Virus record (IMG/VR): IMGVR_UViG_3300024259_000010
Coordinates: 1 to 64,000 of that record
Direction: 5' to 3' (one strand)
Length of the DNA: 64,000 nt
In this document: in pieces, positions 7,731-53,390 of the stretch
How the letters are laid out: each line of letters opens with the position of its first letter
Position numbering within the stretch: position 1 is the first letter of the stretch
Made by a program: the position numbers and the translations under genes
The notes under the pieces: generated by a model
Databases searched by the model: none
The model's input: only the letters and a program-made list of their open reading frames with translations
Told to the model about the DNA's origin: nothing

Positions 7731-7814
7731 GGCCGCATGGCGGAATGGCAGACGCAACGGTCTTAAAAACCGTTTTCTTCGGAAGTGTGAGTTCGACTCT
7801 CACTGTGGCTACCA
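7731..7814 (+). tRNA. tRNA-Leu(UAA)
   Basis: Acceptor GGCCGCA/TGTGGCT, D arm GCGGAATGGCAGACGC, anticodon arm ACGGT-CTTAAAA-ACCGT, long variable arm, TTCGA T loop, encoded CCA. Confidence 0.95.
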
Positions 7815-7819
7815 ACTAT

Positions 7820-7875
7820 CTTAAAATCTGTCGACTATTGCAGTCGTGTCGGTTCGATTCCGGCCTTGGGTACCA
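7820..7875 (+). pseudogene. Orphan 3' half of a second tRNA-Leu(UAA)
   Basis: CTTAAAA loop, variable arm, T arm GTCGG-TTCGATT-CCGGC, CTTGGGT-A-CCA; no matching 5' half nearby. Confidence 0.75.
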
Positions 7876-7893
7876 AAATGTTATTCTAGTTAA

Positions 7894-8384
7894 GTCGGAG
7901 CGTAACGTTATACATTAATTAGTAGCGATAGGACGCTAAGACAAAACTACGATGAAACTCACAAGCTGATAAACCAGAGTATATTCCTTTCTATGATTTG
8001 GAATGAATTGATACTAGATATGTCTGGTTGTTTTATCTATTACGATGATATCTTAAGATTGATTCGTGATGCATTTATTATAATCCTAAAGGATCTTATG
8101 ATAGATGTAAAGACCTGATCGCAGATCCAAAAGATGGGCGCGATTTGGGCAACCCAGCCAAGAATGCAACTGCTTGGTGTCGTTTGACTTAATAGACGGG
8201 TTATATACGTCATGTGTTGTGGTAACGGTTCTATGGACGCATAGACTGGTCGACGGTGGTTCCGGTTATAACCAAGGATTGAGAGGGAAGATGTGGGTGC
8301 CAATGTTATCAAGGATTATTGCAATACGTTGTAGTGATCAGATATTACGCATCATTCGAACACGCCCCTACCTCGCTCTCCGAC
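7894..8384 (+). ncRNA. Candidate ~490-nt structured ncRNA (RNA-A), family unassigned
   Basis: 5'/3' closing helix, many internal hairpins, terminator directly after; only weak short ORFs overlap. Confidence 0.6.
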
Positions 8385-8391
8385 CTTTTTA

Positions 8392-8428
8392 AATACTTCT
8401 ACCTCAATCGGGTAGGAGTATTCTTTTT
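8392..8428 (+). terminator. Rho-independent terminator
   Basis: TACTTCTACC/GGTAGGAGTA stem plus T-rich tail. Confidence 0.8.
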
Positions 8429-8467
8429 ATATCTGTTATCAAATTAATCAATAAATAAGGAAGAACA

Positions 8468-8725
8468 ATGGCTAAGAAGAAAGAACAAGGACCAAGAATT
8501 TCAGCATGTGGTACACATAAACACATGATCAATGAACGCTTAACTGAAGCTGTTATCAATGAAGGCAAGATCGTATGTAAAGACTCTAAAGGTTTTTATG
8601 TAACTACTGCTCGTGAAATTGATAGTGGTCTTATGGACCCTAATCGTCAGAAGTGTACTCGTGTGCGGGATAATGAACTCGCCGCTGAAGGTATTGTTAT
8701 CGGTACTACTCATAATGCAGATTAA
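8468..8725 (+). CDS. Hypothetical protein
   Basis: 85-aa ORF, AAGGAAG RBS. Confidence 0.75.
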   Translation: MAKKKEQGPRISACGTHKHMINERLTEAVINEGKIVCKDSKGFYVTTAREIDSGLMDPNRQKCTRVRDNELAAEGIVIGTTHNAD

Positions 8726-8843
8726 AGAAGTATGGGATAAATGCGCCCAAGAAGAAAAAGATAAGCTTTTTAAAATAGGATGGTTTTCTTTAATAGGAAT
8801 TCTTATTGCATGTGGTGCACTTGTTATATTTTACAAAGGATAG
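8715..8843 (+). CDS. Small membrane protein (42 aa)
   Basis: ATG 8715; hydrophobic segment GWFSLIGILIACGALVIF. Confidence 0.55.
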   Translation: MQIKEVWDKCAQEEKDKLFKIGWFSLIGILIACGALVIFYKG

Positions 8844-8846
8844 TTT

Positions 8847-9389
8847 ATGAAAATAGAAATACTCACACCATTATTAGTACGCTGTCGCCGATATGGAATC
8901 TCATTTGATTATGGATGGGATGATGAAACTGATACATACAGATTAAAGCTATTCATAAATAAGACTAAAGTATATGATACTGGTCCGACTATGGAAATAG
9001 AAGCTGGTGTGCAGGAAGCTATTAAACGCATTGATAAAGAAAATGAAAATGGTGATCTTAATAACCATACTAATGTTATCGATGCTACTATTAATGTAGA
9101 TAAAGAAGATTCTGAGTTATTCCACAAGATCAAGGAAACTATTGGATTCTTACTTGGTGTACCTGAGAAAAAGATTACATTGAAATCAAGTATCGTAGAA
9201 GATCTTAAAGCTAATTCATTGGATTCAGTTGAATTGATCATGCAGATTGAAGAAGACTTTGGTGTTACTATCTTGGATGAGGACGCTGTTAAAATTAAGA
9301 CAGTGGAAGATATCTATAATTGGGCGGTAGCATATGGCTCACCTAGTTGTCGAGTACTTGCTGTAACTAAGATAACCAAAATAGATTAA
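8847..9389 (+). CDS. Acyl carrier protein domain fused to an unknown N-terminal domain
   Basis: EDLKANSLDSVELIMQIEEDFGVTILDEDAVKIKTVEDI matches the AcpP consensus except DSL is NSL. Confidence 0.85.
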   Translation: MKIEILTPLLVRCRRYGISFDYGWDDETDTYRLKLFINKTKVYDTGPTMEIEAGVQEAIKRIDKENENGDLNNHTNVIDATINVDKEDSELFHKIKETIGFLLGVPEKKITLKSSIVEDLKANSLDSVELIMQIEEDFGVTILDEDAVKIKTVEDIYNWAVAYGSPSCRVLAVTKITKID

Positions 9390-9446
9390 TTAAGAATATG
9401 CAAATCTTGCTTTCAAAAAGTGAGTTTAATAATTTATATCCCTGAG

Positions 9447-9830
9447 TATAATAAGTTGGTTATGCGGATTGCTTGTTTGCGGTCGGCCTGCTTATAACTA
9501 ATTGGGGTATATAAAATCCATGATGTACCGGCGTATCCTTCGGGGTACATTACCCACGTCATGGTCTAGTATATTGATTACTTGTTATTGTAACCCATAC
9601 GAGGGTTATTAGAGTATACGGTATCATGTTGATGATTCCTTGCCTGAAGACGGGCAAGTGGAGACAGTACTAAACAATATGCAAACCAGTAAACAGTCTG
9701 GCAGAACGGGGAGCAACTAGCCCGCCAGATGAGGACCTATACATTATTTATAGGAGGGTCGGGAGCAGTGGCCTTTTAAATCACTATCATGAAAAACAAT
9801 GATAGCACTGCCACCAATTTATTGATTATA
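9447..9830 (+). ncRNA. Candidate ~385-nt structured ncRNA (RNA-B), family unassigned
   Basis: 11-bp closing helix (9450-9460/9813-9823), at least 7 internal stems, no ORF of 60 aa or more on either strand, terminator follows. Confidence 0.65.
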
Positions 9831-9870
9831 AGATACTACTGGATTGTCCAGTAGTATCTTATATATTTTT
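9828..9870 (+). terminator. Long hairpin terminator
   Basis: Perfect 16-bp IR ATAAGATACTACTGGA/TCCAGTAGTATCTTAT plus T-rich tail. Confidence 0.8.
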
Positions 9871-9893: not shown

Positions 9894-10181
9894 ATGAAAT
9901 ATGTAATTGTAAATGATGGATGGGATACAGACCCAGTACCATGTGCTCATGTCTTCTCAGAAGAGATTGGTCACAAAATGGTTGTGGATATGAATACCCA
10001 AGTTATGAGCGCAGGTTTCTGTAATGTAGTGGACGGTCGAATGATTGTTCAAGTTGGTCGTCCTTCTGATTCATTAAATATTGGACCTGCACCTAATGAT
10101 GGAGATCTTCTAACAAAATTAATCCTCCAAGGCAAAGAGCCTATGGATATTGTACGTGAGCGAAGGGATGCTAATGAATAA
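9894..10181 (+). CDS. Hypothetical protein
   Basis: 95-aa ORF, AAGGAG RBS. Confidence 0.8.
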   Translation: MKYVIVNDGWDTDPVPCAHVFSEEIGHKMVVDMNTQVMSAGFCNVVDGRMIVQVGRPSDSLNIGPAPNDGDLLTKLILQGKEPMDIVRERRDANE

Positions 10182-10695
10182 AATAACTAAAATGAAATTA
10201 TGTGTATGGTGGTTCCATCGTGGTCAGAAATATGGTGAGTTGCCATACACATTCCACTTAAATCAATGTTTTGATAGACTACTTGGTTTACACTGTGTAG
10301 ACGTAGATCTACTATGTGCTATGCTTGGTCATGATCTATTTGAAGATACGAAATGTTATTATGCATTTGTTGAAAAACATTTTGGATATCGTGTAGCAGA
10401 GTTGATCAAGGGTATGACTAAGAGTCAAGGAGCTGATTATACGAAGTATGTCAAATCTATTACAAAGAGGACTGAATATCGTAAGGATGTTATGATCCTT
10501 AAAATGATTGATAATATTTGTAACCATACTAATAGTTACATGACTCGTGACCGTAGACGTATGACTAAGTATGAAGGTTCGTTAGGTATATTGCGAGAAA
10601 CATGTGATATGTTATTACATACCAAATCTATATCTGAAATGGATGCGTTACATCAGTTAATAGCGTCTATGGCAGTCCCGACAATTGAGGAATAA
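10174..10695 (+). CDS. HD-domain hydrolase, RelA/SpoT (Mesh1 / small alarmone hydrolase)-like
   Basis: HRGQKYGELPYTFH, GHDLFEDT and KMIDNICN match SpoT-type HD motifs. Confidence 0.8.
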   Translation: MNKITKMKLCVWWFHRGQKYGELPYTFHLNQCFDRLLGLHCVDVDLLCAMLGHDLFEDTKCYYAFVEKHFGYRVAELIKGMTKSQGADYTKYVKSITKRTEYRKDVMILKMIDNICNHTNSYMTRDRRRMTKYEGSLGILRETCDMLLHTKSISEMDALHQLIASMAVPTIEE

Positions 10696-13784: not shown

Positions 13785-14372
13785 ATGATACAAAGTATTA
13801 CATTTGCAAAGGAACTCTTTTGTTTCAAAGTAGGAGATTCATATGACTTCAAACCATTAACATTATTGGTCGGAGATCAAGGGTGTGGTAAAAGCACTAT
13901 ACTGAATCTATTGGGTAAGCAAGGTATGTATGGTAGTACGCAAATGGTAAACATTGAAGTTGGTAAGAATGACAATGGTTTCATTCACCATGATTTTGAA
14001 ATGGCTAGTCATCGTACTAATACTAGCGGACCAAATCCATACTCACCTGATTACAATGACCAGTTGATTAGAATGATTGATTCTAAGTCTATGTCTCACG
14101 GTGAAGCCACTAAGGTTTCCTTTGAAGATTTTGATAGAATTGAAACAGATATTCTTATATTGGATGAACCCGATATGTCACTGTCTATGCGAAGTGTACA
14201 TATGTTAGTGGAACATGTTAAACGATGGATTGATTCAGGTAAGCAAGTTATCTTGAGTTGTCATCATCCGTATCTTATAGAAGCTTTTGATGAAGTATTA
14301 TCCTTGGAACATAAACAATGGATGTCATCTAAAGAATTTATAGAATCACATAATTTAAAGATGGACCTGTAG
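13785..14372 (+). CDS. ABC/AAA-type ATPase
   Basis: Walker A GDQGCGKS, signature-like SHGE, Walker B ILILDEP, H-loop SCHH. Confidence 0.88.
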   Translation: MIQSITFAKELFCFKVGDSYDFKPLTLLVGDQGCGKSTILNLLGKQGMYGSTQMVNIEVGKNDNGFIHHDFEMASHRTNTSGPNPYSPDYNDQLIRMIDSKSMSHGEATKVSFEDFDRIETDILILDEPDMSLSMRSVHMLVEHVKRWIDSGKQVILSCHHPYLIEAFDEVLSLEHKQWMSSKEFIESHNLKMDL

Positions 14373-14439
14373 CTCAGTTGGTCAGAGCAGGACACTCATA
14401 ATGTCTTGGTCGGGGGTTCAAGTCCCTCCGGGTCCACCA
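14363..14439 (+). tRNA. tRNA-Ile2(CAU) (lysidine type; elongator Met not excluded)
   Basis: Acceptor GGACCTG/CGGGTCC, anticodon arm GGACA-CTCATAA-TGTCT, overall pattern like E. coli ileX, encoded CCA. Confidence 0.9.
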
Positions 14440-25873: not shown

Positions 25874-26728
25874 ATGATTATGAATATTGATGAAGTGTAT
25901 TGCGACATGCTCCGTAAGATTATTGCGGATGGAATTACTAAAGAAAACCGTACAGGTGTAACTACTAAGTCTATTAGTGGATATATGCTTGAGTACGATA
26001 TGGCAAATGGATTCCCGTTGCTTACAACTAAGAAAATGGCGTGGAAGACTCTTCGTGTTGAGCTTGAAGGATTCATTAAAGGTGTTACTAACAAACAATG
26101 GTTTACTGACCGTGGGTGCAATATCTGGAATGAATGGTGTAATCCTCAGAAGGTTGCTTATGGACATGATGAAGAGACTCAAGCTAAGATGAAAGCTGAA
26201 GATGATCTTGGTGTTATCTATGGATCACAATGGCGTAACTTCAATGGTGAAGATTGTGACCAGTTGGCTATTGCTATTGATAAACTTAAGAACAATCCCG
26301 AGTGTCGTCGTAATATTGTTATGGCTTGGAATCCTCTTAAGCTTGATCAGATGGCTTTAGTGCCTTGCCACTTCGGTTTCCAACTATTAGCTAATAACGG
26401 TACACTAGATTTACTATGGAGTCAGCGTAGTTGTGATAGCTTCCTCGGGATTCCTTTTAACATTGCCTCTTATGGTTTGCTACTAGAGCTTATTGCTAAA
26501 GAGTGTGGATTAAAAGCCGGTAAGCTTATTGGATTCCTCGGTGATGTACATATCTATGAAAACCATATGGATGTCATTGAAGAGCAACTTAATCGTAAAC
26601 CCCTCACTGCGCCTACATTGAATCTTAATGGTGATCTGTATAACAGTATCTTTGATTGGGAATGGGATCATGCTACTCTATTGGGATATGATTGTCATCC
26701 TGCACTAAAGGGTGCTGTAGCCGTATAA
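25874..26728 (+). CDS. thyA: Thymidylate synthase
   Basis: NRTGVTT, FPLLTTKK, LVPCH, QRSCDSFLGIPFNIASY, GDVHIYENH. Confidence 0.98.
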   Translation: MIMNIDEVYCDMLRKIIADGITKENRTGVTTKSISGYMLEYDMANGFPLLTTKKMAWKTLRVELEGFIKGVTNKQWFTDRGCNIWNEWCNPQKVAYGHDEETQAKMKAEDDLGVIYGSQWRNFNGEDCDQLAIAIDKLKNNPECRRNIVMAWNPLKLDQMALVPCHFGFQLLANNGTLDLLWSQRSCDSFLGIPFNIASYGLLLELIAKECGLKAGKLIGFLGDVHIYENHMDVIEEQLNRKPLTAPTLNLNGDLYNSIFDWEWDHATLLGYDCHPALKGAVAV

Positions 26729-26877: not shown

Positions 26878-27360
26878 ATGATTGGATTAGTTGCTAGAAG
26901 CATAAACAATGTGATCGGGAAAGATGGAGAACTCCCTTGGAAGTGTAAAGGTGATCTGAAGTTCTTTAAAAAGATGACTATGGGTAAAGATATTTTAGTT
27001 GGTAGATCAACTTGGGAAAAATTACCAGACTTAGCAGGTAGGCATGTATTTGTATTATCATCTAAACGCATACCAACCTTTACTAGATCTCATACATGCT
27101 TATCGATAAAGGAAGTTCCTGATAGTGTGATTGTATGTGGTGGTGCTAATGTCTACTCTCAGTTATTATCGGAGTGTGATATTATATATGTTACCACTAT
27201 TCGAAATGTTGTAGAAGGCGATACTCATTTCAATGAAGATTGGTTAAAGAATCATAAGGCCGCAGATGTTGTTGAGAATCATGAAGATTACTATATTACA
27301 CGGTATGTGAAACAAGATGAAGATCCACATAGATTCTTTGATTCAACAAATAAATTATAG
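26878..27360 (+). CDS. folA: Dihydrofolate reductase
   Basis: VIGKDGELPW, DLKFFKKMTMGK, VGRSTW, GG, GDTHF. Confidence 0.96.
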   Translation: MIGLVARSINNVIGKDGELPWKCKGDLKFFKKMTMGKDILVGRSTWEKLPDLAGRHVFVLSSKRIPTFTRSHTCLSIKEVPDSVIVCGGANVYSQLLSECDIIYVTTIRNVVEGDTHFNEDWLKNHKAADVVENHEDYYITRYVKQDEDPHRFFDSTNKL

Positions 27361-28181: not shown

Positions 28182-28580
28182 ATGAAAACGATTTTTACAA
28201 ACGGATGTTTTGACATGATACATGCAGGACATGTTCGTTTATTAGTACATGCAAAATCTTTAGGTGATAAACTTGTAGTTGGTATTAATTCAGATGAGTC
28301 AGTAAGACGAATCAAAGGTCCCGGTCGACCATATCAATCACAAGAGGATCGTAAGTTTGTTTTAGAACAATTTGCCTTTGTAGATGAGGTAATTATTTTT
28401 AAAGAAGACACTGAGTATAAAACACTTGAGAGACTTATGCCAGATGTAACCGTTAAAGGTTCTGAGTGGAAAGGTATTCTTGATGTACCAGAAGGTATTG
28501 ATATTGAATATTATGATATAGGATGTGTAATATCCAAATTATCATCATCAGCATATATTAATGATAAGAAGAGGAACTGA
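28182..28580 (+). CDS. Cytidylyl/adenylyltransferase (RfaE domain II / TagD-like)
   Basis: NGCFDMIHAGH, VGINSDESVRRIKGPGRP. Confidence 0.92.
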   Translation: MKTIFTNGCFDMIHAGHVRLLVHAKSLGDKLVVGINSDESVRRIKGPGRPYQSQEDRKFVLEQFAFVDEVIIFKEDTEYKTLERLMPDVTVKGSEWKGILDVPEGIDIEYYDIGCVISKLSSSAYINDKKRN

Positions 28581-39821: not shown

Positions 39822-39899
39822 GCCCCGGTAGCTCAGTTGGATAGCAGCAACGGCCTTCTAAGCCGTAGGTCACTGGTTCGAGTCCAGTTCGGGGTACCA
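39822..39899 (+). tRNA. tRNA-Arg(UCU)
   Basis: Acceptor GCCCCGG/TCGGGGT, anticodon arm ACGGC-CTTCTAA-GCCGT, TTCGA T loop, encoded CCA. Confidence 0.93.
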
Positions 39900-46347: not shown

Positions 46348-47886
46348 ATGGAAGAAGTTAAGAACATTGTAGAAGTCGAATCATTGTCAGAACTAAAGAT
46401 TCTTGTCAATGGAAAAAAGCATGTTGTAGTAAAGTTATGGGCACCTTGGTGTGGTCCTTGTAAAACCTTTGCACCTATTGTAAACAAAGTTAACAGTGAA
46501 CTCGAATTAGACGTAAGTATTGTTGGAGTAGATGTTGATGCTGTCCCGATTGTTGCGGCTGTGTATGGAGTACGTAGTATTCCTACTCTACTAATGTTTG
46601 AAGATGGCGAATGTAGGAAACAGATTCAAGGTATAGTTCCTGAGCACCAGCTCAAAGAACTTATCGCTGATTTTGTTAATGGTGTAGAAGAAGAATTAAC
46701 TGAGGAGGTACAAGTTGAAAAACCCATTGATACAGTTGAAACTGAAGTTGAAGTCGCTACAGAGAGTCAGACAGATGAGAAGGGAACGCACCAAGATGAT
46801 GATGAATCGGATGTGGTTGGAGAATTAGAAGAAGCTCCATCTATTCCTGAAGAAGTCGTCGAGGCTGAAGTACCAGGTGATAGTGAACCACCATCGGTGA
46901 AGCAGGAAGGATCTATCTTTGCCGCCTCTCCCGATGCAACATTAGTTACTGAAGAAACTCCAGGTATTGGTAAGGTGACTGCTATTGAACGTGGTGATGA
47001 AGGAACTGTATTAGATGTGCCCAATCAAGAGCAAGGGACTGTGTCAGATGTTAAGGTTGAAAACAGAGCATTGACTGAAAAAGAGATACAGGAAGAACTT
47101 GATGCTGTTAAGCCTATTGATGTTGTAATACACCCTGAGTTGCTTACTAAAGATGAGGTAGTGGAAGAAGCAGTTGCCACTAGTGATCGTGTTAAGCAAA
47201 CCTCACCAGGTATTGTATTACCTACTGAAGATGAAACAGTTCTTGAATGTCCTATCCAAGATTGTGCCTATAATGAAGCTTGTGAATGTGCATTTGCTGA
47301 AGCTACTATTCAGACTATTGCACCACCATGTGGTAATGTACCGAATGAATGTCCTGCAGTAATTAATAATACCTCAGATCAAGAAAAATCACTACCACCT
47401 GATCAAGATTGGAATGAAGAAAAAGATATTGATGTAGATCGTCGTCATAATCATTTCAAGATTAAAGCAACAGCTGCACATGTTCACGCTATGTATCAAG
47501 ATCATGAACACTATCATGAAGGCGATGCTGGATTGGATCTATTCATTGCTGAAGATCAGATTATCCCAGTTGGTCTTGGTAACAAGATTGATCTATGTAT
47601 TGTCTGTGAACCGGAAGATGGTATTGCATATGAGCTATGGCCTCGTAGTAGTATCTCTAAGACTCCTCTCCGTCTTGCCAATAGTATTGGTTTGATTGAT
47701 GGTGGTTACCGTGGACACATCATGGCTGTGGTTGATAACTTTGGTCCAGTTGGCTATGAGATTAACGCTGGTACTCGTTTGTTCCAACTTGTTGCTGCTG
47801 ATAAGATGCCTATTACATTTGAGATGGTAACTGAAGTATCAGAGACCGCTCGTGGTACAGGTGGGTTCGGTAGTACTGGAGCTTAA
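46348..47886 (+). CDS. dut: Thioredoxin - acidic linker - Cys-rich module - dUTPase fusion
   Basis: N-terminal WAPWCGPC; C-terminal AGLDL, PRSS, GLIDGGYRG, QLV, RGTGGFGSTG; a single 512-aa ORF. Confidence 0.92.
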   Translation: MEEVKNIVEVESLSELKILVNGKKHVVVKLWAPWCGPCKTFAPIVNKVNSELELDVSIVGVDVDAVPIVAAVYGVRSIPTLLMFEDGECRKQIQGIVPEHQLKELIADFVNGVEEELTEEVQVEKPIDTVETEVEVATESQTDEKGTHQDDDESDVVGELEEAPSIPEEVVEAEVPGDSEPPSVKQEGSIFAASPDATLVTEETPGIGKVTAIERGDEGTVLDVPNQEQGTVSDVKVENRALTEKEIQEELDAVKPIDVVIHPELLTKDEVVEEAVATSDRVKQTSPGIVLPTEDETVLECPIQDCAYNEACECAFAEATIQTIAPPCGNVPNECPAVINNTSDQEKSLPPDQDWNEEKDIDVDRRHNHFKIKATAAHVHAMYQDHEHYHEGDAGLDLFIAEDQIIPVGLGNKIDLCIVCEPEDGIAYELWPRSSISKTPLRLANSIGLIDGGYRGHIMAVVDNFGPVGYEINAGTRLFQLVAADKMPITFEMVTEVSETARGTGGFGSTGA

Positions 47887-52879: not shown

Positions 52880-53308
52880 GGGCCTGCCTGGTTTCGACAG
52901 TACAATGGAATTCATAACTACAAGTAGAGGATGATCGTCGGCCTCTTTAAACATCGGTCAACAATTAGTTGGAACGAAAGTGATCAACTTCCCTAGTGCT
53001 CGCGCTCTTGCAGCGTAATCACGTCCCTTTTAATTAAGGGAGGGCTTGAGGATACCTAGAATTCTCTGGGATGAAGTATCTTCTAACTTAGGTATACCCA
53101 AAGAGGTGTGCTTAATACAATTAAGCAGAGAGCCCTATAGCAGCAATGCTATTTAAATAGTTAGGATCACTATATGGAAAAGAGATCTGAGTGTGAGTAG
53201 TGCTGTATATACTATTTGGTTTACTAGTAAAGTAAAACTAGGTAAAAACTTGTAACAACGTTATGTTGGAAATTATATTGGACGAGGGTTCGACTCCCTC
53301 CAGGTCCA
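52880..53308 (+). ncRNA. ssrA: tmRNA; tag (A)GTKVINFPSARALAA at 52971-53018
   Basis: 5' GGGCCTGCCTGGTTTCGACAG; 3' GGACGAGGGTTCGACTCCCTCCAGGTCCA with a G3-U wobble; P2 pairings TACAAGT/ACTTGTA and ATAAC/GTTAT; internal ORF ending ALAA-stop. Confidence 0.95.
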
Positions 53309-53390
53309 AATCCACAATAATTACTGCCTCCACGCGGCGTGGGTTGGATACTATACTTAGGTATAGGCTAAATGTAATAAGAAAGGAATA

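What the first reader, a model, noticed from the sequence alone, without database searches (positions are those of the whole stretch)
8847..9389. Phage acyl carrier protein with NSL instead of DSL, fused to an unknown domain
The C-terminal ~80 aa is an AcpP. Established: the Ser of the DSL motif is phosphopantetheinylated and the preceding Asp is highly conserved. Here the Ser is kept but Asp is Asn. An ~85-aa N-terminal domain is in frame. Inference: an ACP mimic or decoy that diverts host acyl-transfer or lipid enzymes, or an acyl donor for phage protein modification.
Basis: partly seen in the sequence, partly recalled or inferred. Interest (0 to 1): 0.6.

Follow-up and report, generated by a model that had tools for sequence, protein, structure and literature searches.

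The report
Jumbo-phage acyl carrier protein, Asn-Ser-Leu variant
A marine phiKZ-like jumbo phage encodes a two-domain protein whose second half is a genuine fatty-acid-type acyl carrier protein carrying the one natural substitution (Asp to Asn before the carrier serine) that, when engineered in E. coli, stops the housekeeping loading enzyme AcpS from loading the carrier, so it may work as an unloaded or selectively loaded carrier during host takeover.

Summary
Window 8847-9389 (+) is a 180-aa ORF with a good ribosome-binding site. Residues 89-165 are an AcpP-type acyl carrier domain (NCBIfam above cut-off; E. coli ACP Z 14.8). The motif is Asn123-Ser124-Leu125. An N-terminal alpha-beta3-alpha domain (1-67) with no detectable relatives is joined by a disordered linker.

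The genome is a 236-kb phiKZ-like jumbo phage from seawater, host unknown. No PPTase and no ACP-using enzyme was found in it.

Asn here is rare:
- 31 of 185,579 bacterial species genomes carry the Asn pattern.
- In one sampled class, 188 genomes have the Asp pattern and 1 has the Asn pattern.
- Viral contigs give 7 Asn loci against at least 120 Asp loci.

Published work shows that D35N blocks AcpS loading in E. coli but still allows Sfp loading. However, a few bacteria use an NSL AcpP as their only housekeeping ACP, so Asn does not prove a decoy. Phage ACPs fused to unknown extensions turn out to be common.

My best reading (about 0.4) is an ACP that AcpS cannot load. It would then be mostly unloaded (apo) or loaded only by an Sfp-type PPTase, and would act on host ACP-client enzymes. 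This is a new variant of a known kind, of moderate interest.

The parts
8847..9389 (+). Complete ORF, 180 aa plus stop (protein P0001): orphan N-terminal domain + linker + AcpP-type carrier domain + short tail
   Evidence: identical protein and DNA in other assemblies
8836..8840 (+). Shine-Dalgarno-like AAGGA, 6 nt upstream of the ATG; the stop of the preceding 42-aa ORF (TAG 8841-8843) lies between them, which suggests translational coupling
   Evidence: sequence
8847..9047 (+). N-terminal domain, residues 1-67: predicted helix 3-15, strands 18-25, 30-37 and 40-44, helix 48-67. No relatives found by sequence and no assignable fold.
   Evidence: AF2 pLDDT 60-79. No homologue. The Atlas structure search gave only small hypothetical clusters at TM 0.55-0.65.
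9048..9110 (+). Disordered, Asn- and acid-rich linker, residues 68-88
   Evidence: pLDDT about 39-57
9111..9341 (+). AcpP-type acyl carrier domain, residues 89-165 (four-helix bundle). Net charge over residues 90-163 is -7, against -13.6 +/- 2.9 for the aligned stretch in 56 stand-alone viral ACPs.
9213..9215 (+). Asn123 codon (AAT) at the position of E. coli ACP Asp35. Two residues earlier, Lys121 replaces the usual Gly33.
   Evidence: The codon is unchanged in contigs from other seawater runs that cover it (X2 record 5, X4 record 16).
9216..9218 (+). Ser124 codon (TCA), the predicted 4'-phosphopantetheine attachment serine
9342..9386 (+). C-terminal tail, residues 166-180, predicted disordered; contains Cys168
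8468..8725 (+). First gene of the same transcription unit: 85-aa basic protein with Cys and His residues, no family match
8715..8843 (+). Second gene of the unit: 42-aa ORF with a C-terminal hydrophobic segment. It overlaps the stop of the first gene and ends 3 nt before the ACP start codon.
8392..8422 (+). Terminator-like hairpin that closes the preceding unit
9827..9863 (+). 17-bp terminator-like hairpin with a T run; the likely end of the ACP transcription unit, after a 437-nt structured non-coding stretch

Best explanation
The gene is an accessory host-takeover gene of a marine phiKZ-like jumbo phage. Its product tethers a true AcpP-type carrier domain to an orphan 67-residue domain through a flexible linker.

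The carrier domain keeps the serine and the helix II residues that ACP-client enzymes and Sfp-type PPTases recognise: Asp126, Glu129, Glu135 and Glu136. These correspond to E. coli D38, E41, E47 and E48. It has neutralised the patch that AcpS-type PPTases dock on, through D35 to Asn123 and G33 to Lys121.

I infer that the protein is poorly loaded, or not loaded, by a housekeeping AcpS. It would then be largely apo, or be loaded only where an Sfp-type PPTase is present. I further infer that it acts by binding host ACP-client enzymes of lipid synthesis as a competitor or adaptor, with the N-terminal domain giving location or a second contact.

Shown: the domain identity, the motif, the rarity of Asn, the absence of phage partner enzymes, and the published effect of D35N. 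Inferred: the loading state, the targets, and the role of the N-terminal domain.
For: Domain identity: AcpP-type by sequence and by fold.

Strong selection on Asp:
- The Asn pattern occurs in 31 of 185,579 species genomes.
- In one sampled bacterial class of 201 genomes, 188 have the Asp pattern and 1 has the Asn pattern.
- Among aligned stand-alone viral ACPs, 55 have Asp and 1 has Asn.
- Viral contigs give 7 Asn loci against at least 120 Asp loci.

Published effects of the substitution:
- D35N blocks AcpS loading in vivo for E. coli ACP, mouse mitochondrial ACP and Salmonella IacP, while Sfp still loads them.
- In the same study E41A and E47A/E48A were not converted by Sfp in vitro, and D38 was left unmutated because earlier work showed it is needed by Sfp. 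All these residues are retained here (bioRxiv 10.1101/2025.01.28.635281; alignment).
- D35N also abolishes ACP-IscS binding (PMC13343975).
- Apo-ACP inhibits glycerol-3-phosphate acyltransferase more strongly than holo-ACP (PMC3896788).

Further sequence features:
- The neighbouring Gly33 is also replaced, by Lys, and the domain is about 2 SD less acidic than other viral ACPs.

Phage context:
- No PPTase, adenylating enzyme, ketosynthase or PlsC-type acyltransferase is present.
- Whole-genome Pfam tallies show none either.
- A distant kin phage carries an ACP-like protein with no serine at all (DVY), so ACP folds without a prosthetic group are used in this phage group.
- The gene lies in a region of small early-type genes and is absent from a kin phage that is 90% complete.
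Against: - In five bacterial genomes, the only AcpP scoring above the equivalog cut-off is an NSL protein, and those genomes hold PF01648 PPTases. Some PPTases must therefore load NSL carriers.
- The host is unknown. If it uses an Sfp-type PPTase for primary metabolism, Asn is simply tolerated.
- Retention of Ser-Leu-Asp and of all residues needed for Sfp loading fits a working carrier equally well.
- Only one sequence type exists, with identical DNA in every sample. Constraint on Ser124 or Asn123 therefore cannot be measured.
- There is no expression or loading data.
- Most phage ACPs keep DSL, so the general role of phage ACPs probably needs loading.
Confidence: 0.4

Rival explanations
1. 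Working holo-carrier (a classical auxiliary metabolic gene). The host PPTase loads Ser124 normally, and the protein adds to or redirects the host's acyl-ACP pool for membrane or lipid A synthesis during infection. In that host, Asn is a tolerated neutral change.
For: - The serine and helix II recognition residues are intact.
- The score is above the cut-off of an NCBIfam ACP model.
- NSL AcpPs serve as the sole housekeeping ACP in some bacteria.
- Phage ACPs are widespread and mostly DSL. The literature annotates them as metabolic genes (PMC8224337).
Against: - Asn at this position is very rare and blocks AcpS in the tested systems.
- The additional G33K change and the loss of about 6 negative charges point away from a plain AcpP substitute.
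- An obligatory N-terminal domain is not needed by a pool-filling ACP.
- ACP is already very abundant in bacteria (general knowledge).
Confidence: 0.3
2. Non-catalytic ACP-fold subunit. The domain would serve as a structural or regulatory adaptor in a phage assembly, or as a virion-associated protein. This would resemble mitochondrial ACP in complex I and LYR complexes, or ribosomal L50, with or without the prosthetic group. The N-terminal domain would be the docking piece.
For: - Kin phage G003 has an ACP-like protein without the serine, beside an RNA polymerase beta' gene piece. It matches Ribosomal_L50 and DUF1493 weakly.
- An ACP was detected by mass spectrometry in virions of Erwinia jumbo phages (PMC7760394).
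- Many structural hits are ACPs bound as subunits of large complexes.
Against: - No partner was identified. The one complex prediction gave no answer.
- The gene is absent from a near-complete kin genome, so it is not a core structural part.
- The serine is retained.
Confidence: 0.15
3. Dedicated acyl donor. After loading and acylation by host enzymes, the carrier hands an acyl group to a phage or host protein or small molecule, as IacP does for SipB in Salmonella. A target might be the small membrane peptide encoded just upstream.
For: - The gene appears translationally coupled to a 42-aa hydrophobic peptide and an 85-aa protein in one terminator-bounded unit.
- Specialised ACPs of this kind exist (IacP).
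Against: - No acyltransferase, adenylating enzyme or thioesterase-type family was seen in the phage.
- There is no relative with such a context.
- Asn would hinder loading by AcpS.
Confidence: 0.1

Closest known systems
Bacterial housekeeping AcpP (for example E. coli ACP, PDB 4ihf_G and 1acp)
   Same: - The four-helix carrier fold (Z 14.8, rmsd 2.0, 42% identity).
- The serine at the start of helix II.
- The Leu-Asp-x-Val-Glu-Leu helix II, and the E47/E48 equivalents.
   Different: - Asn replaces Asp35 and Lys replaces Gly33.
- About 6 fewer negative charges.
- An 88-residue N-terminal addition and a 15-residue tail.
- No fab gene neighbours; the gene is encoded by a phage.
Phage-encoded ACPs (PHROG 5934 and relatives; for example the ACPs of Ralstonia phage RSL1, Burkholderia phage BCSR5, Vibrio phage P018-4 and Olleya phage Harreka_1)
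   Same: - A PP-binding domain in a phage with no fatty-acid synthesis genes around it.
- Often fused to an extension of unknown function: BCSR5 is 162 aa with an N-terminal extension, P018-4 is 186 aa with a C-terminal one, and many IMG/VR ORFs are 141-177 aa.
   Different: - Those examined keep Asp-Ser-Leu.
- None of their extensions resembles this N-terminal domain.
- No close relative of the whole protein exists in any collection searched.
Engineered D35N acyl carrier proteins (Dhembla et al., bioRxiv 10.1101/2025.01.28.635281)
   Same: Exactly the same residue change in the DSL motif, with D38, E41 and E47/E48 left intact. That combination made ACPs refractory to AcpS in vivo but loadable by Sfp.
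   Different: Those are laboratory mutants of E. coli, mouse and Salmonella ACPs, whereas this is a natural phage sequence. Its behaviour with any PPTase is untested.
Natural NSL carriers found here: sole AcpP of some Chloroflexia and Alphaproteobacteria MAGs, and two other viral types (L021-type 81-aa moron; L023, 170 aa)
   Same: An Asn-Ser-Leu-Asp-x-Val-Glu-Leu motif in an otherwise AcpP-like protein.
   Different: - The bacterial ones are stand-alone housekeeping proteins from high-GC soil lineages.
- The viral ones have no domain like residues 1-67.
- Similarity to the phage domain is no higher than for DSL proteins (57-60 bits against 57), so common descent of the Asn is not indicated.
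ACP-fold proteins used without carrier chemistry (mitochondrial ribosomal L50; the serine-less ACP-like protein of kin phage G003)
   Same: A small acidic helical bundle used as a binding module.
   Different: The protein studied here keeps the serine and the full AcpP signature apart from the Asp.

Membership tests
AcpP-type acyl carrier protein (Pfam PF00550; NCBIfam NF002148 / TIGR00517) | Significant match to the family models over the whole domain | tested here: met
   PF00550 38.9 bits (cut-off 20.8); NF002148 78.3 bits (cut-off 71); TIGR00517 68.9 bits, just under its 70.45 cut-off
AcpP-type acyl carrier protein | Four-helix bundle fold | tested here: met
   AF2 pLDDT 93-98 over residues 90-165; E. 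coli ACP Z 14.8, rmsd 2.0
AcpP-type acyl carrier protein | Conserved serine at the N-terminus of helix II for 4'-phosphopantetheine | tested here: met
   Ser124 aligns with the carrier serine
AcpP-type acyl carrier protein | Asp immediately before the serine (DSL) | tested here: not met
   Asn123; Asp is present in 55 of 56 aligned viral ACPs and the Asp pattern in 188 of 201 sampled genomes of one class
AcpP-type acyl carrier protein | Acidic recognition helix II (D38, E41, E47, E48 equivalents) | tested here: met
   Asp126, Glu129, Glu135 and Glu136 are present. The domain as a whole is less acidic than usual.
AcpP-type acyl carrier protein | Actual phosphopantetheinylation and acyl carriage | not testable with these tools
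   Needs mass spectrometry of the expressed protein
AcpP-type acyl carrier protein | Genomic association with fab genes or a PPTase | tested here: not met
   No PF01648, PF00109, PF00501 or PF01553 in the 236-kb genome, and none in the Pfam tallies
Phage ACP group (PHROG 5934) | Match to the PHROG profile in a phage genome | tested here: met
   phrog_5934 E 5.6e-14, residues 85-158; the genome carries phiKZ-type capsid, vertex, internal head and multisubunit RNA polymerase genes
AcpS-refractory, Sfp-loadable carrier (the D35N phenotype) | Asn at position 35 with D38, E41 and E47/E48 retained | tested here: met
   Alignment compared with the mutant set in bioRxiv 10.1101/2025.01.28.635281
AcpS-refractory, Sfp-loadable carrier (the D35N phenotype) | Not loaded by AcpS but loaded by Sfp | not testable with these tools
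   Biochemical assay required

The most novel reading that the evidence does not exclude
The phage has evolved a natural 'AcpS-proof' acyl carrier domain (D35N plus G33K). The domain would stay unloaded in the infected cell. Tethered by an orphan domain, it would act as an apo-ACP-type inhibitor or hijacker of host ACP-client enzymes. That would be the first viral host-takeover factor built on an unloaded ACP, and a clue to what the many fused phage ACPs do.
Probability: 0.2. Interest if true: 0.75.

Novelty: new variant of a known kind. Interest (0 to 1): 0.45.

Why it matters
Phage-encoded ACPs are common, and they are annotated as metabolic genes. In the papers I could search, none has a demonstrated function.

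This one differs from a normal ACP at the residue whose neutralisation was shown to separate AcpS loading from Sfp loading. That gives a sharp and cheap experiment: a loading assay plus an N123D revertant. The result could show whether a phage ACP acts as a carrier or as a protein-binding decoy.

The survey also shows that a large share of viral ACPs are fused to unknown extensions. This suggests that tethering an ACP to something else is a general phage strategy worth studying.

Tried and rejected
- **Word-index protein searches.** Searches with the whole protein, with residues 1-88 and with residues 86-180 found only the protein itself or nothing.
- **Viral contig and megablast searches.** The pattern search of viral contigs and a megablast against phages found no relative.
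- **Exhaustive HMMER search with residues 1-90.** It gave only the protein itself and a 1579-aa repeat protein, P0002. That E-value comes from four near-identical 45-residue repeats at 27% identity, so I treat it as not meaningful.
- **Paralogues.** The N-terminal domain has none in the phage. It shows no similarity to the extensions of other viral ACPs.
- **Single-sequence AF2.** It failed, with pLDDT 37.
- **Fold searches with the two-domain model.** The lists were filled by the ACP domain, so the fold of residues 1-67 was not properly tested.
- **Complex prediction.** The ACP protein with the co-transcribed 85-aa protein gave no answer. This is neither support nor evidence against binding.
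- **Cytidylyltransferase-like ORF at 28182-28580.** I considered whether it is a phosphopantetheine adenylyltransferase. It matches RfaE domain II far better, so I dropped it.
- **SpoT-like HD_4 ORF at 10150-10695.** I considered whether it links the ACP to the ACP-SpoT switch. Three points speak against this: it lies in the next transcription unit; it only matches the N-terminal hydrolase region of RelA/SpoT models, so it lacks the part of SpoT that I recall as the ACP-binding region (memory); and SpoT does not bind apo-ACP. I left it as a passing note.
- **Host inference.** It failed. The closest isolates share only 25-30% identity in the RNA polymerase beta subunit. The RecJ hits were to mislabelled bacterial fragments.
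- **Reads and contigs from other seawater runs.** They showed no variation inside the gene, so no dN/dS could be computed.

Full report
**What is there.** The window is the first 64 kb of a 235,833-bp virus record, 34% G+C, rated 91% complete. Pfam tallies over its ORFs show the phiKZ major capsid protein, the phiKZ vertex protein, phiKZ internal head proteins, a divergent family B DNA polymerase and multisubunit RNA polymerase pieces. The closest isolates (PBS1/AR9, phiKZ-like phages) share only 25-30% identity in the RNA polymerase beta subunit. The DNA is held by seawater and marine metagenome runs from several studies. It is therefore a marine phiKZ-like jumbo phage with an unknown host.

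**The gene.** ORF 8847-9389 (+) encodes 180 aa. An AAGGA lies 6 nt before the ATG. The stop of a preceding 42-aa ORF lies between the two, and that ORF overlaps the stop of an 85-aa ORF. Terminator-like hairpins at 8392-8422 and 9827-9863 bound this three-gene unit. Contigs from an ENA assembly and a Logan run match the window DNA letter for letter, and a JGI metagenome contig encodes the identical protein with the same neighbouring genes although its DNA could not be read. Contig fragments from three further seawater runs show no difference inside the gene. Differences occur only in the non-coding stretch 9659-9846.

**The carrier domain.**
- Residues 94-159 match PP-binding (E 1.1e-9).
- An NCBIfam ACP model is passed at 78.3 bits against a 71-bit cut-off. 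The AcpP equivalog model is missed by 1.5 bits.
- phmmer finds AcpPs of Aquifex, Thermus, E. coli and others at E 1e-15 to 1e-12.
- With an alignment of 56 viral ACPs, AF2 models residues 90-165 at pLDDT 93-98.
- The best structural match is E. coli ACP (Z 14.8, rmsd 2.0, 76 residues, 42% identity).

The motif reads Leu-Lys-Ala-Asn-Ser-Leu-Asp-Ser-Val-Glu-Leu. The serine, Asp38, Glu41 and Glu47/Glu48 equivalents are present. Asp35 is Asn123 and Gly33 is Lys121. Further consensus acidic positions are replaced: E53 to Thr141, E60 to Val148, and three Lys in the helix I to loop region. Over residues 90-163 the domain has net charge -7, against -13.6 +/- 2.9 for the same aligned stretch in the 56 viral ACPs.

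**The N-terminal part.** AF2 gives helix 3-15, three strands (18-25, 30-37, 40-44) and helix 48-67 at pLDDT 60-79. A disordered linker covers residues 68-88. No relative was found by any of these:
- the word search;
- the exhaustive HMMER search of 1.84 billion representatives (the single other hit is a repeat artefact);
- comparison with other viral ACP extensions;
- a search within the phage itself.

The ESM Atlas holds no two-domain look-alike. Because the ACP domain filled the structural hit lists, the fold of this part remains untested against PDB.

**How unusual is Asn?** I scanned for the DNA pattern encoding [N or D]-S-L-D-x-V-E-L-x-M-x-x-E-E.
- In IMG/VR, the Asn form occurs in 7 loci of two sequence types. 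One is an 81-aa gene on the opposite strand inside a head-tail module. The other is a 170-aa ORF.
- In one genome per 185,579 prokaryote species, the Asn form occurs in 31 loci. All are soil-type MAGs: Chloroflexia, Alphaproteobacteria, Acidobacteriota and a few others.
- In a 201-genome sample of the class that holds one of them, 188 genomes have the Asp form and only that one genome has the Asn form. Four genomes in that tally (G114, G099, G131, G095) are unpublished and are used only as counts.

Asp is therefore under strong selection, and Asn is a rare, sporadic state.

Two limits apply. In five of the Asn genomes, the NSL protein is the only one above the AcpP equivalog cut-off (103-108 bits), and those genomes have PF01648 PPTases. 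NSL is therefore compatible with an essential, loaded ACP in the right enzymatic context. The phage domain is also no closer to those NSL proteins than to DSL ones.

**What the substitution does where it was tested.** A 2025 preprint mutated charged residues of E. coli ACP that pair with AcpS arginines.
- D35N, E41A and E47A/E48A all expressed as apo-protein in E. coli.
- Only D35N could still be loaded by Sfp in vitro.
- The same held for mouse mitochondrial ACP and Salmonella IacP (10.1101/2025.01.28.635281).

The phage protein has this exact combination. In addition, D35N ACP no longer binds IscS (PMC13343975). [quoted passage not shown]

**Context in the phage.**
- No PPTase, AMP-binding enzyme, ketosynthase or PlsC-type acyltransferase is found in six-frame searches.
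- Pfam tallies over 247 ORFs show nucleotide metabolism, replication, structural genes and a few glycosyl- and sulfotransferases, but nothing of lipid or polyketide chemistry. One tally was capped at 25 families.
- A kin genome that is 90% complete lacks any ACP.
- Another kin genome has a 131-aa ACP-like protein with Asp-Val-Tyr in place of Asp-Ser-Leu, beside an RNA polymerase beta' piece.

**Phage ACPs in general.**
- tblastn and BFVD find many phage ACPs.
- Among 107 distinct viral ORFs with the motif, about half are 141-181 aa. Most of these have a C-terminal extension of about 40-70 residues, and a few have N-terminal ones.
- In ten such ORFs scanned, only PP-binding is recognised.
- Isolates show the same: BCSR5 is 162 aa and P018-4 is 186 aa.
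- The papers I found only annotate such genes (PMC8224337, PMC13573597) or detect one in virions (PMC7760394). I found no functional study.

**Interpretation.** The domain is a true AcpP relative, so the family assignment is safe except for the Asp. The most economical reading of Asn123, Lys121 and the reduced acidity, with the Sfp-relevant residues retained and no phage partner enzymes, is a carrier domain insulated from AcpS. It would then be mostly apo, or loaded only by an Sfp-type enzyme, and would act through binding of host ACP clients. The orphan domain would serve as a tether.

I give this reading 0.4. The host PPTase is unknown, natural NSL housekeeping ACPs exist, and the retained serine equally fits a normal carrier (0.3). 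A structural adaptor role (0.15) and a dedicated acyl-donor role (0.1) remain open. A complex prediction with the co-transcribed 85-aa protein gave no answer and is not used as evidence.

**Verdict.** This is a new variant of a known kind: a phage ACP with an orphan N-terminal domain and a naturally occurring D35N-type motif. Interest is moderate. It rises if loading assays show that the protein is AcpS-refractory.

- Read laying was given 1,501 letters.
- Only genetic code 11 was used.
- No spliced model was involved.

Noticed in passing
window 52880-53309 (+): A full-length one-piece tmRNA gene encoded by the phage (Rfam RF00023, 100 bits, model positions 1-374). ARAGORN predicts a tag peptide ending in ALAA.
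   Followed up: partly
window 7731-7814, 14363-14439, 39822-39899 (+): Three phage tRNA genes: Leu(taa), Met(cat) and Arg(tct).
   Followed up: no
window 10150-10695 (+): A small ORF with a RelA/SpoT-type HD hydrolase domain (HD_4). It keeps the HRGQK...PY..H and HD..ED motifs and is a candidate phage small alarmone hydrolase. It lies one transcription unit downstream of the ACP.
   Followed up: partly
window 9390-9826 (+) and 7815-8467 (+): Two non-coding stretches with G+C up to 0.45-0.48 in a 34% G+C genome. The first folds far better than shuffles (z -5.2, with its terminator included) and has no Rfam match. It is also the only place where contigs from other seawater runs differ from the window (9659-9846). 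Both are possible structured RNAs.
   Followed up: partly
window 8715-8843 (+): A 42-aa ORF called by two annotation pipelines. It has a C-terminal hydrophobic segment containing Leu-Ile-Ala-Cys, which resembles a lipobox, and appears translationally coupled to the ACP gene.
   Followed up: no
window 28182-28580 (+): A 132-aa nucleotidyltransferase most like RfaE domain II (heptose-1-phosphate adenylyltransferase, E 4e-38). It is not a phosphopantetheine adenylyltransferase.
   Followed up: partly
window 46348-47886 (+): A 512-aa fusion of an N-terminal thioredoxin and a C-terminal dUTPase, with about 280 unassigned residues between them. Nearby are thymidylate synthase (25874-26728) and DHFR (26878-27360). 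dCMP deaminase and thymidylate kinase matches were also seen in the window but not located.
   Followed up: no
L018 1342-1737 (-) (IMG/VR record G003, 318 kb kin phage): A 131-aa ACP-like protein with Asp-Val-Tyr where ACPs have Asp-Ser-Leu, so it has no carrier serine. It lies next to an RNA polymerase beta' fragment with the NYDFDGD motif.
   Followed up: partly
IMG/VR loci L028-L147 (for example L044 2901-3389, L031 6821-7243, L075 2033-2533): A large set of viral ACPs of 141-177 aa. They have about 20 extra N-terminal residues and a C-terminal extension of about 40-70 residues. In the members scanned, the extensions have no Pfam match. This appears to be an uncharacterised fused-ACP class.
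   Followed up: partly
L021 9817-10059 (-) and five near-identical IMG/VR loci: An 81-aa NSL-type ACP encoded on the opposite strand inside a head-tail module, between a DUF6441 gene and a tail tube gene. The layout is moron-like.
   Followed up: partly
L149-L179 (bacterial MAGs): Sporadic species of Chloroflexia and Alphaproteobacteria whose sole housekeeping AcpP reads NSL. In some Acidobacteriota loci a short NSL ACP-like ORF lies near a normal DSL ACP.
   Followed up: partly
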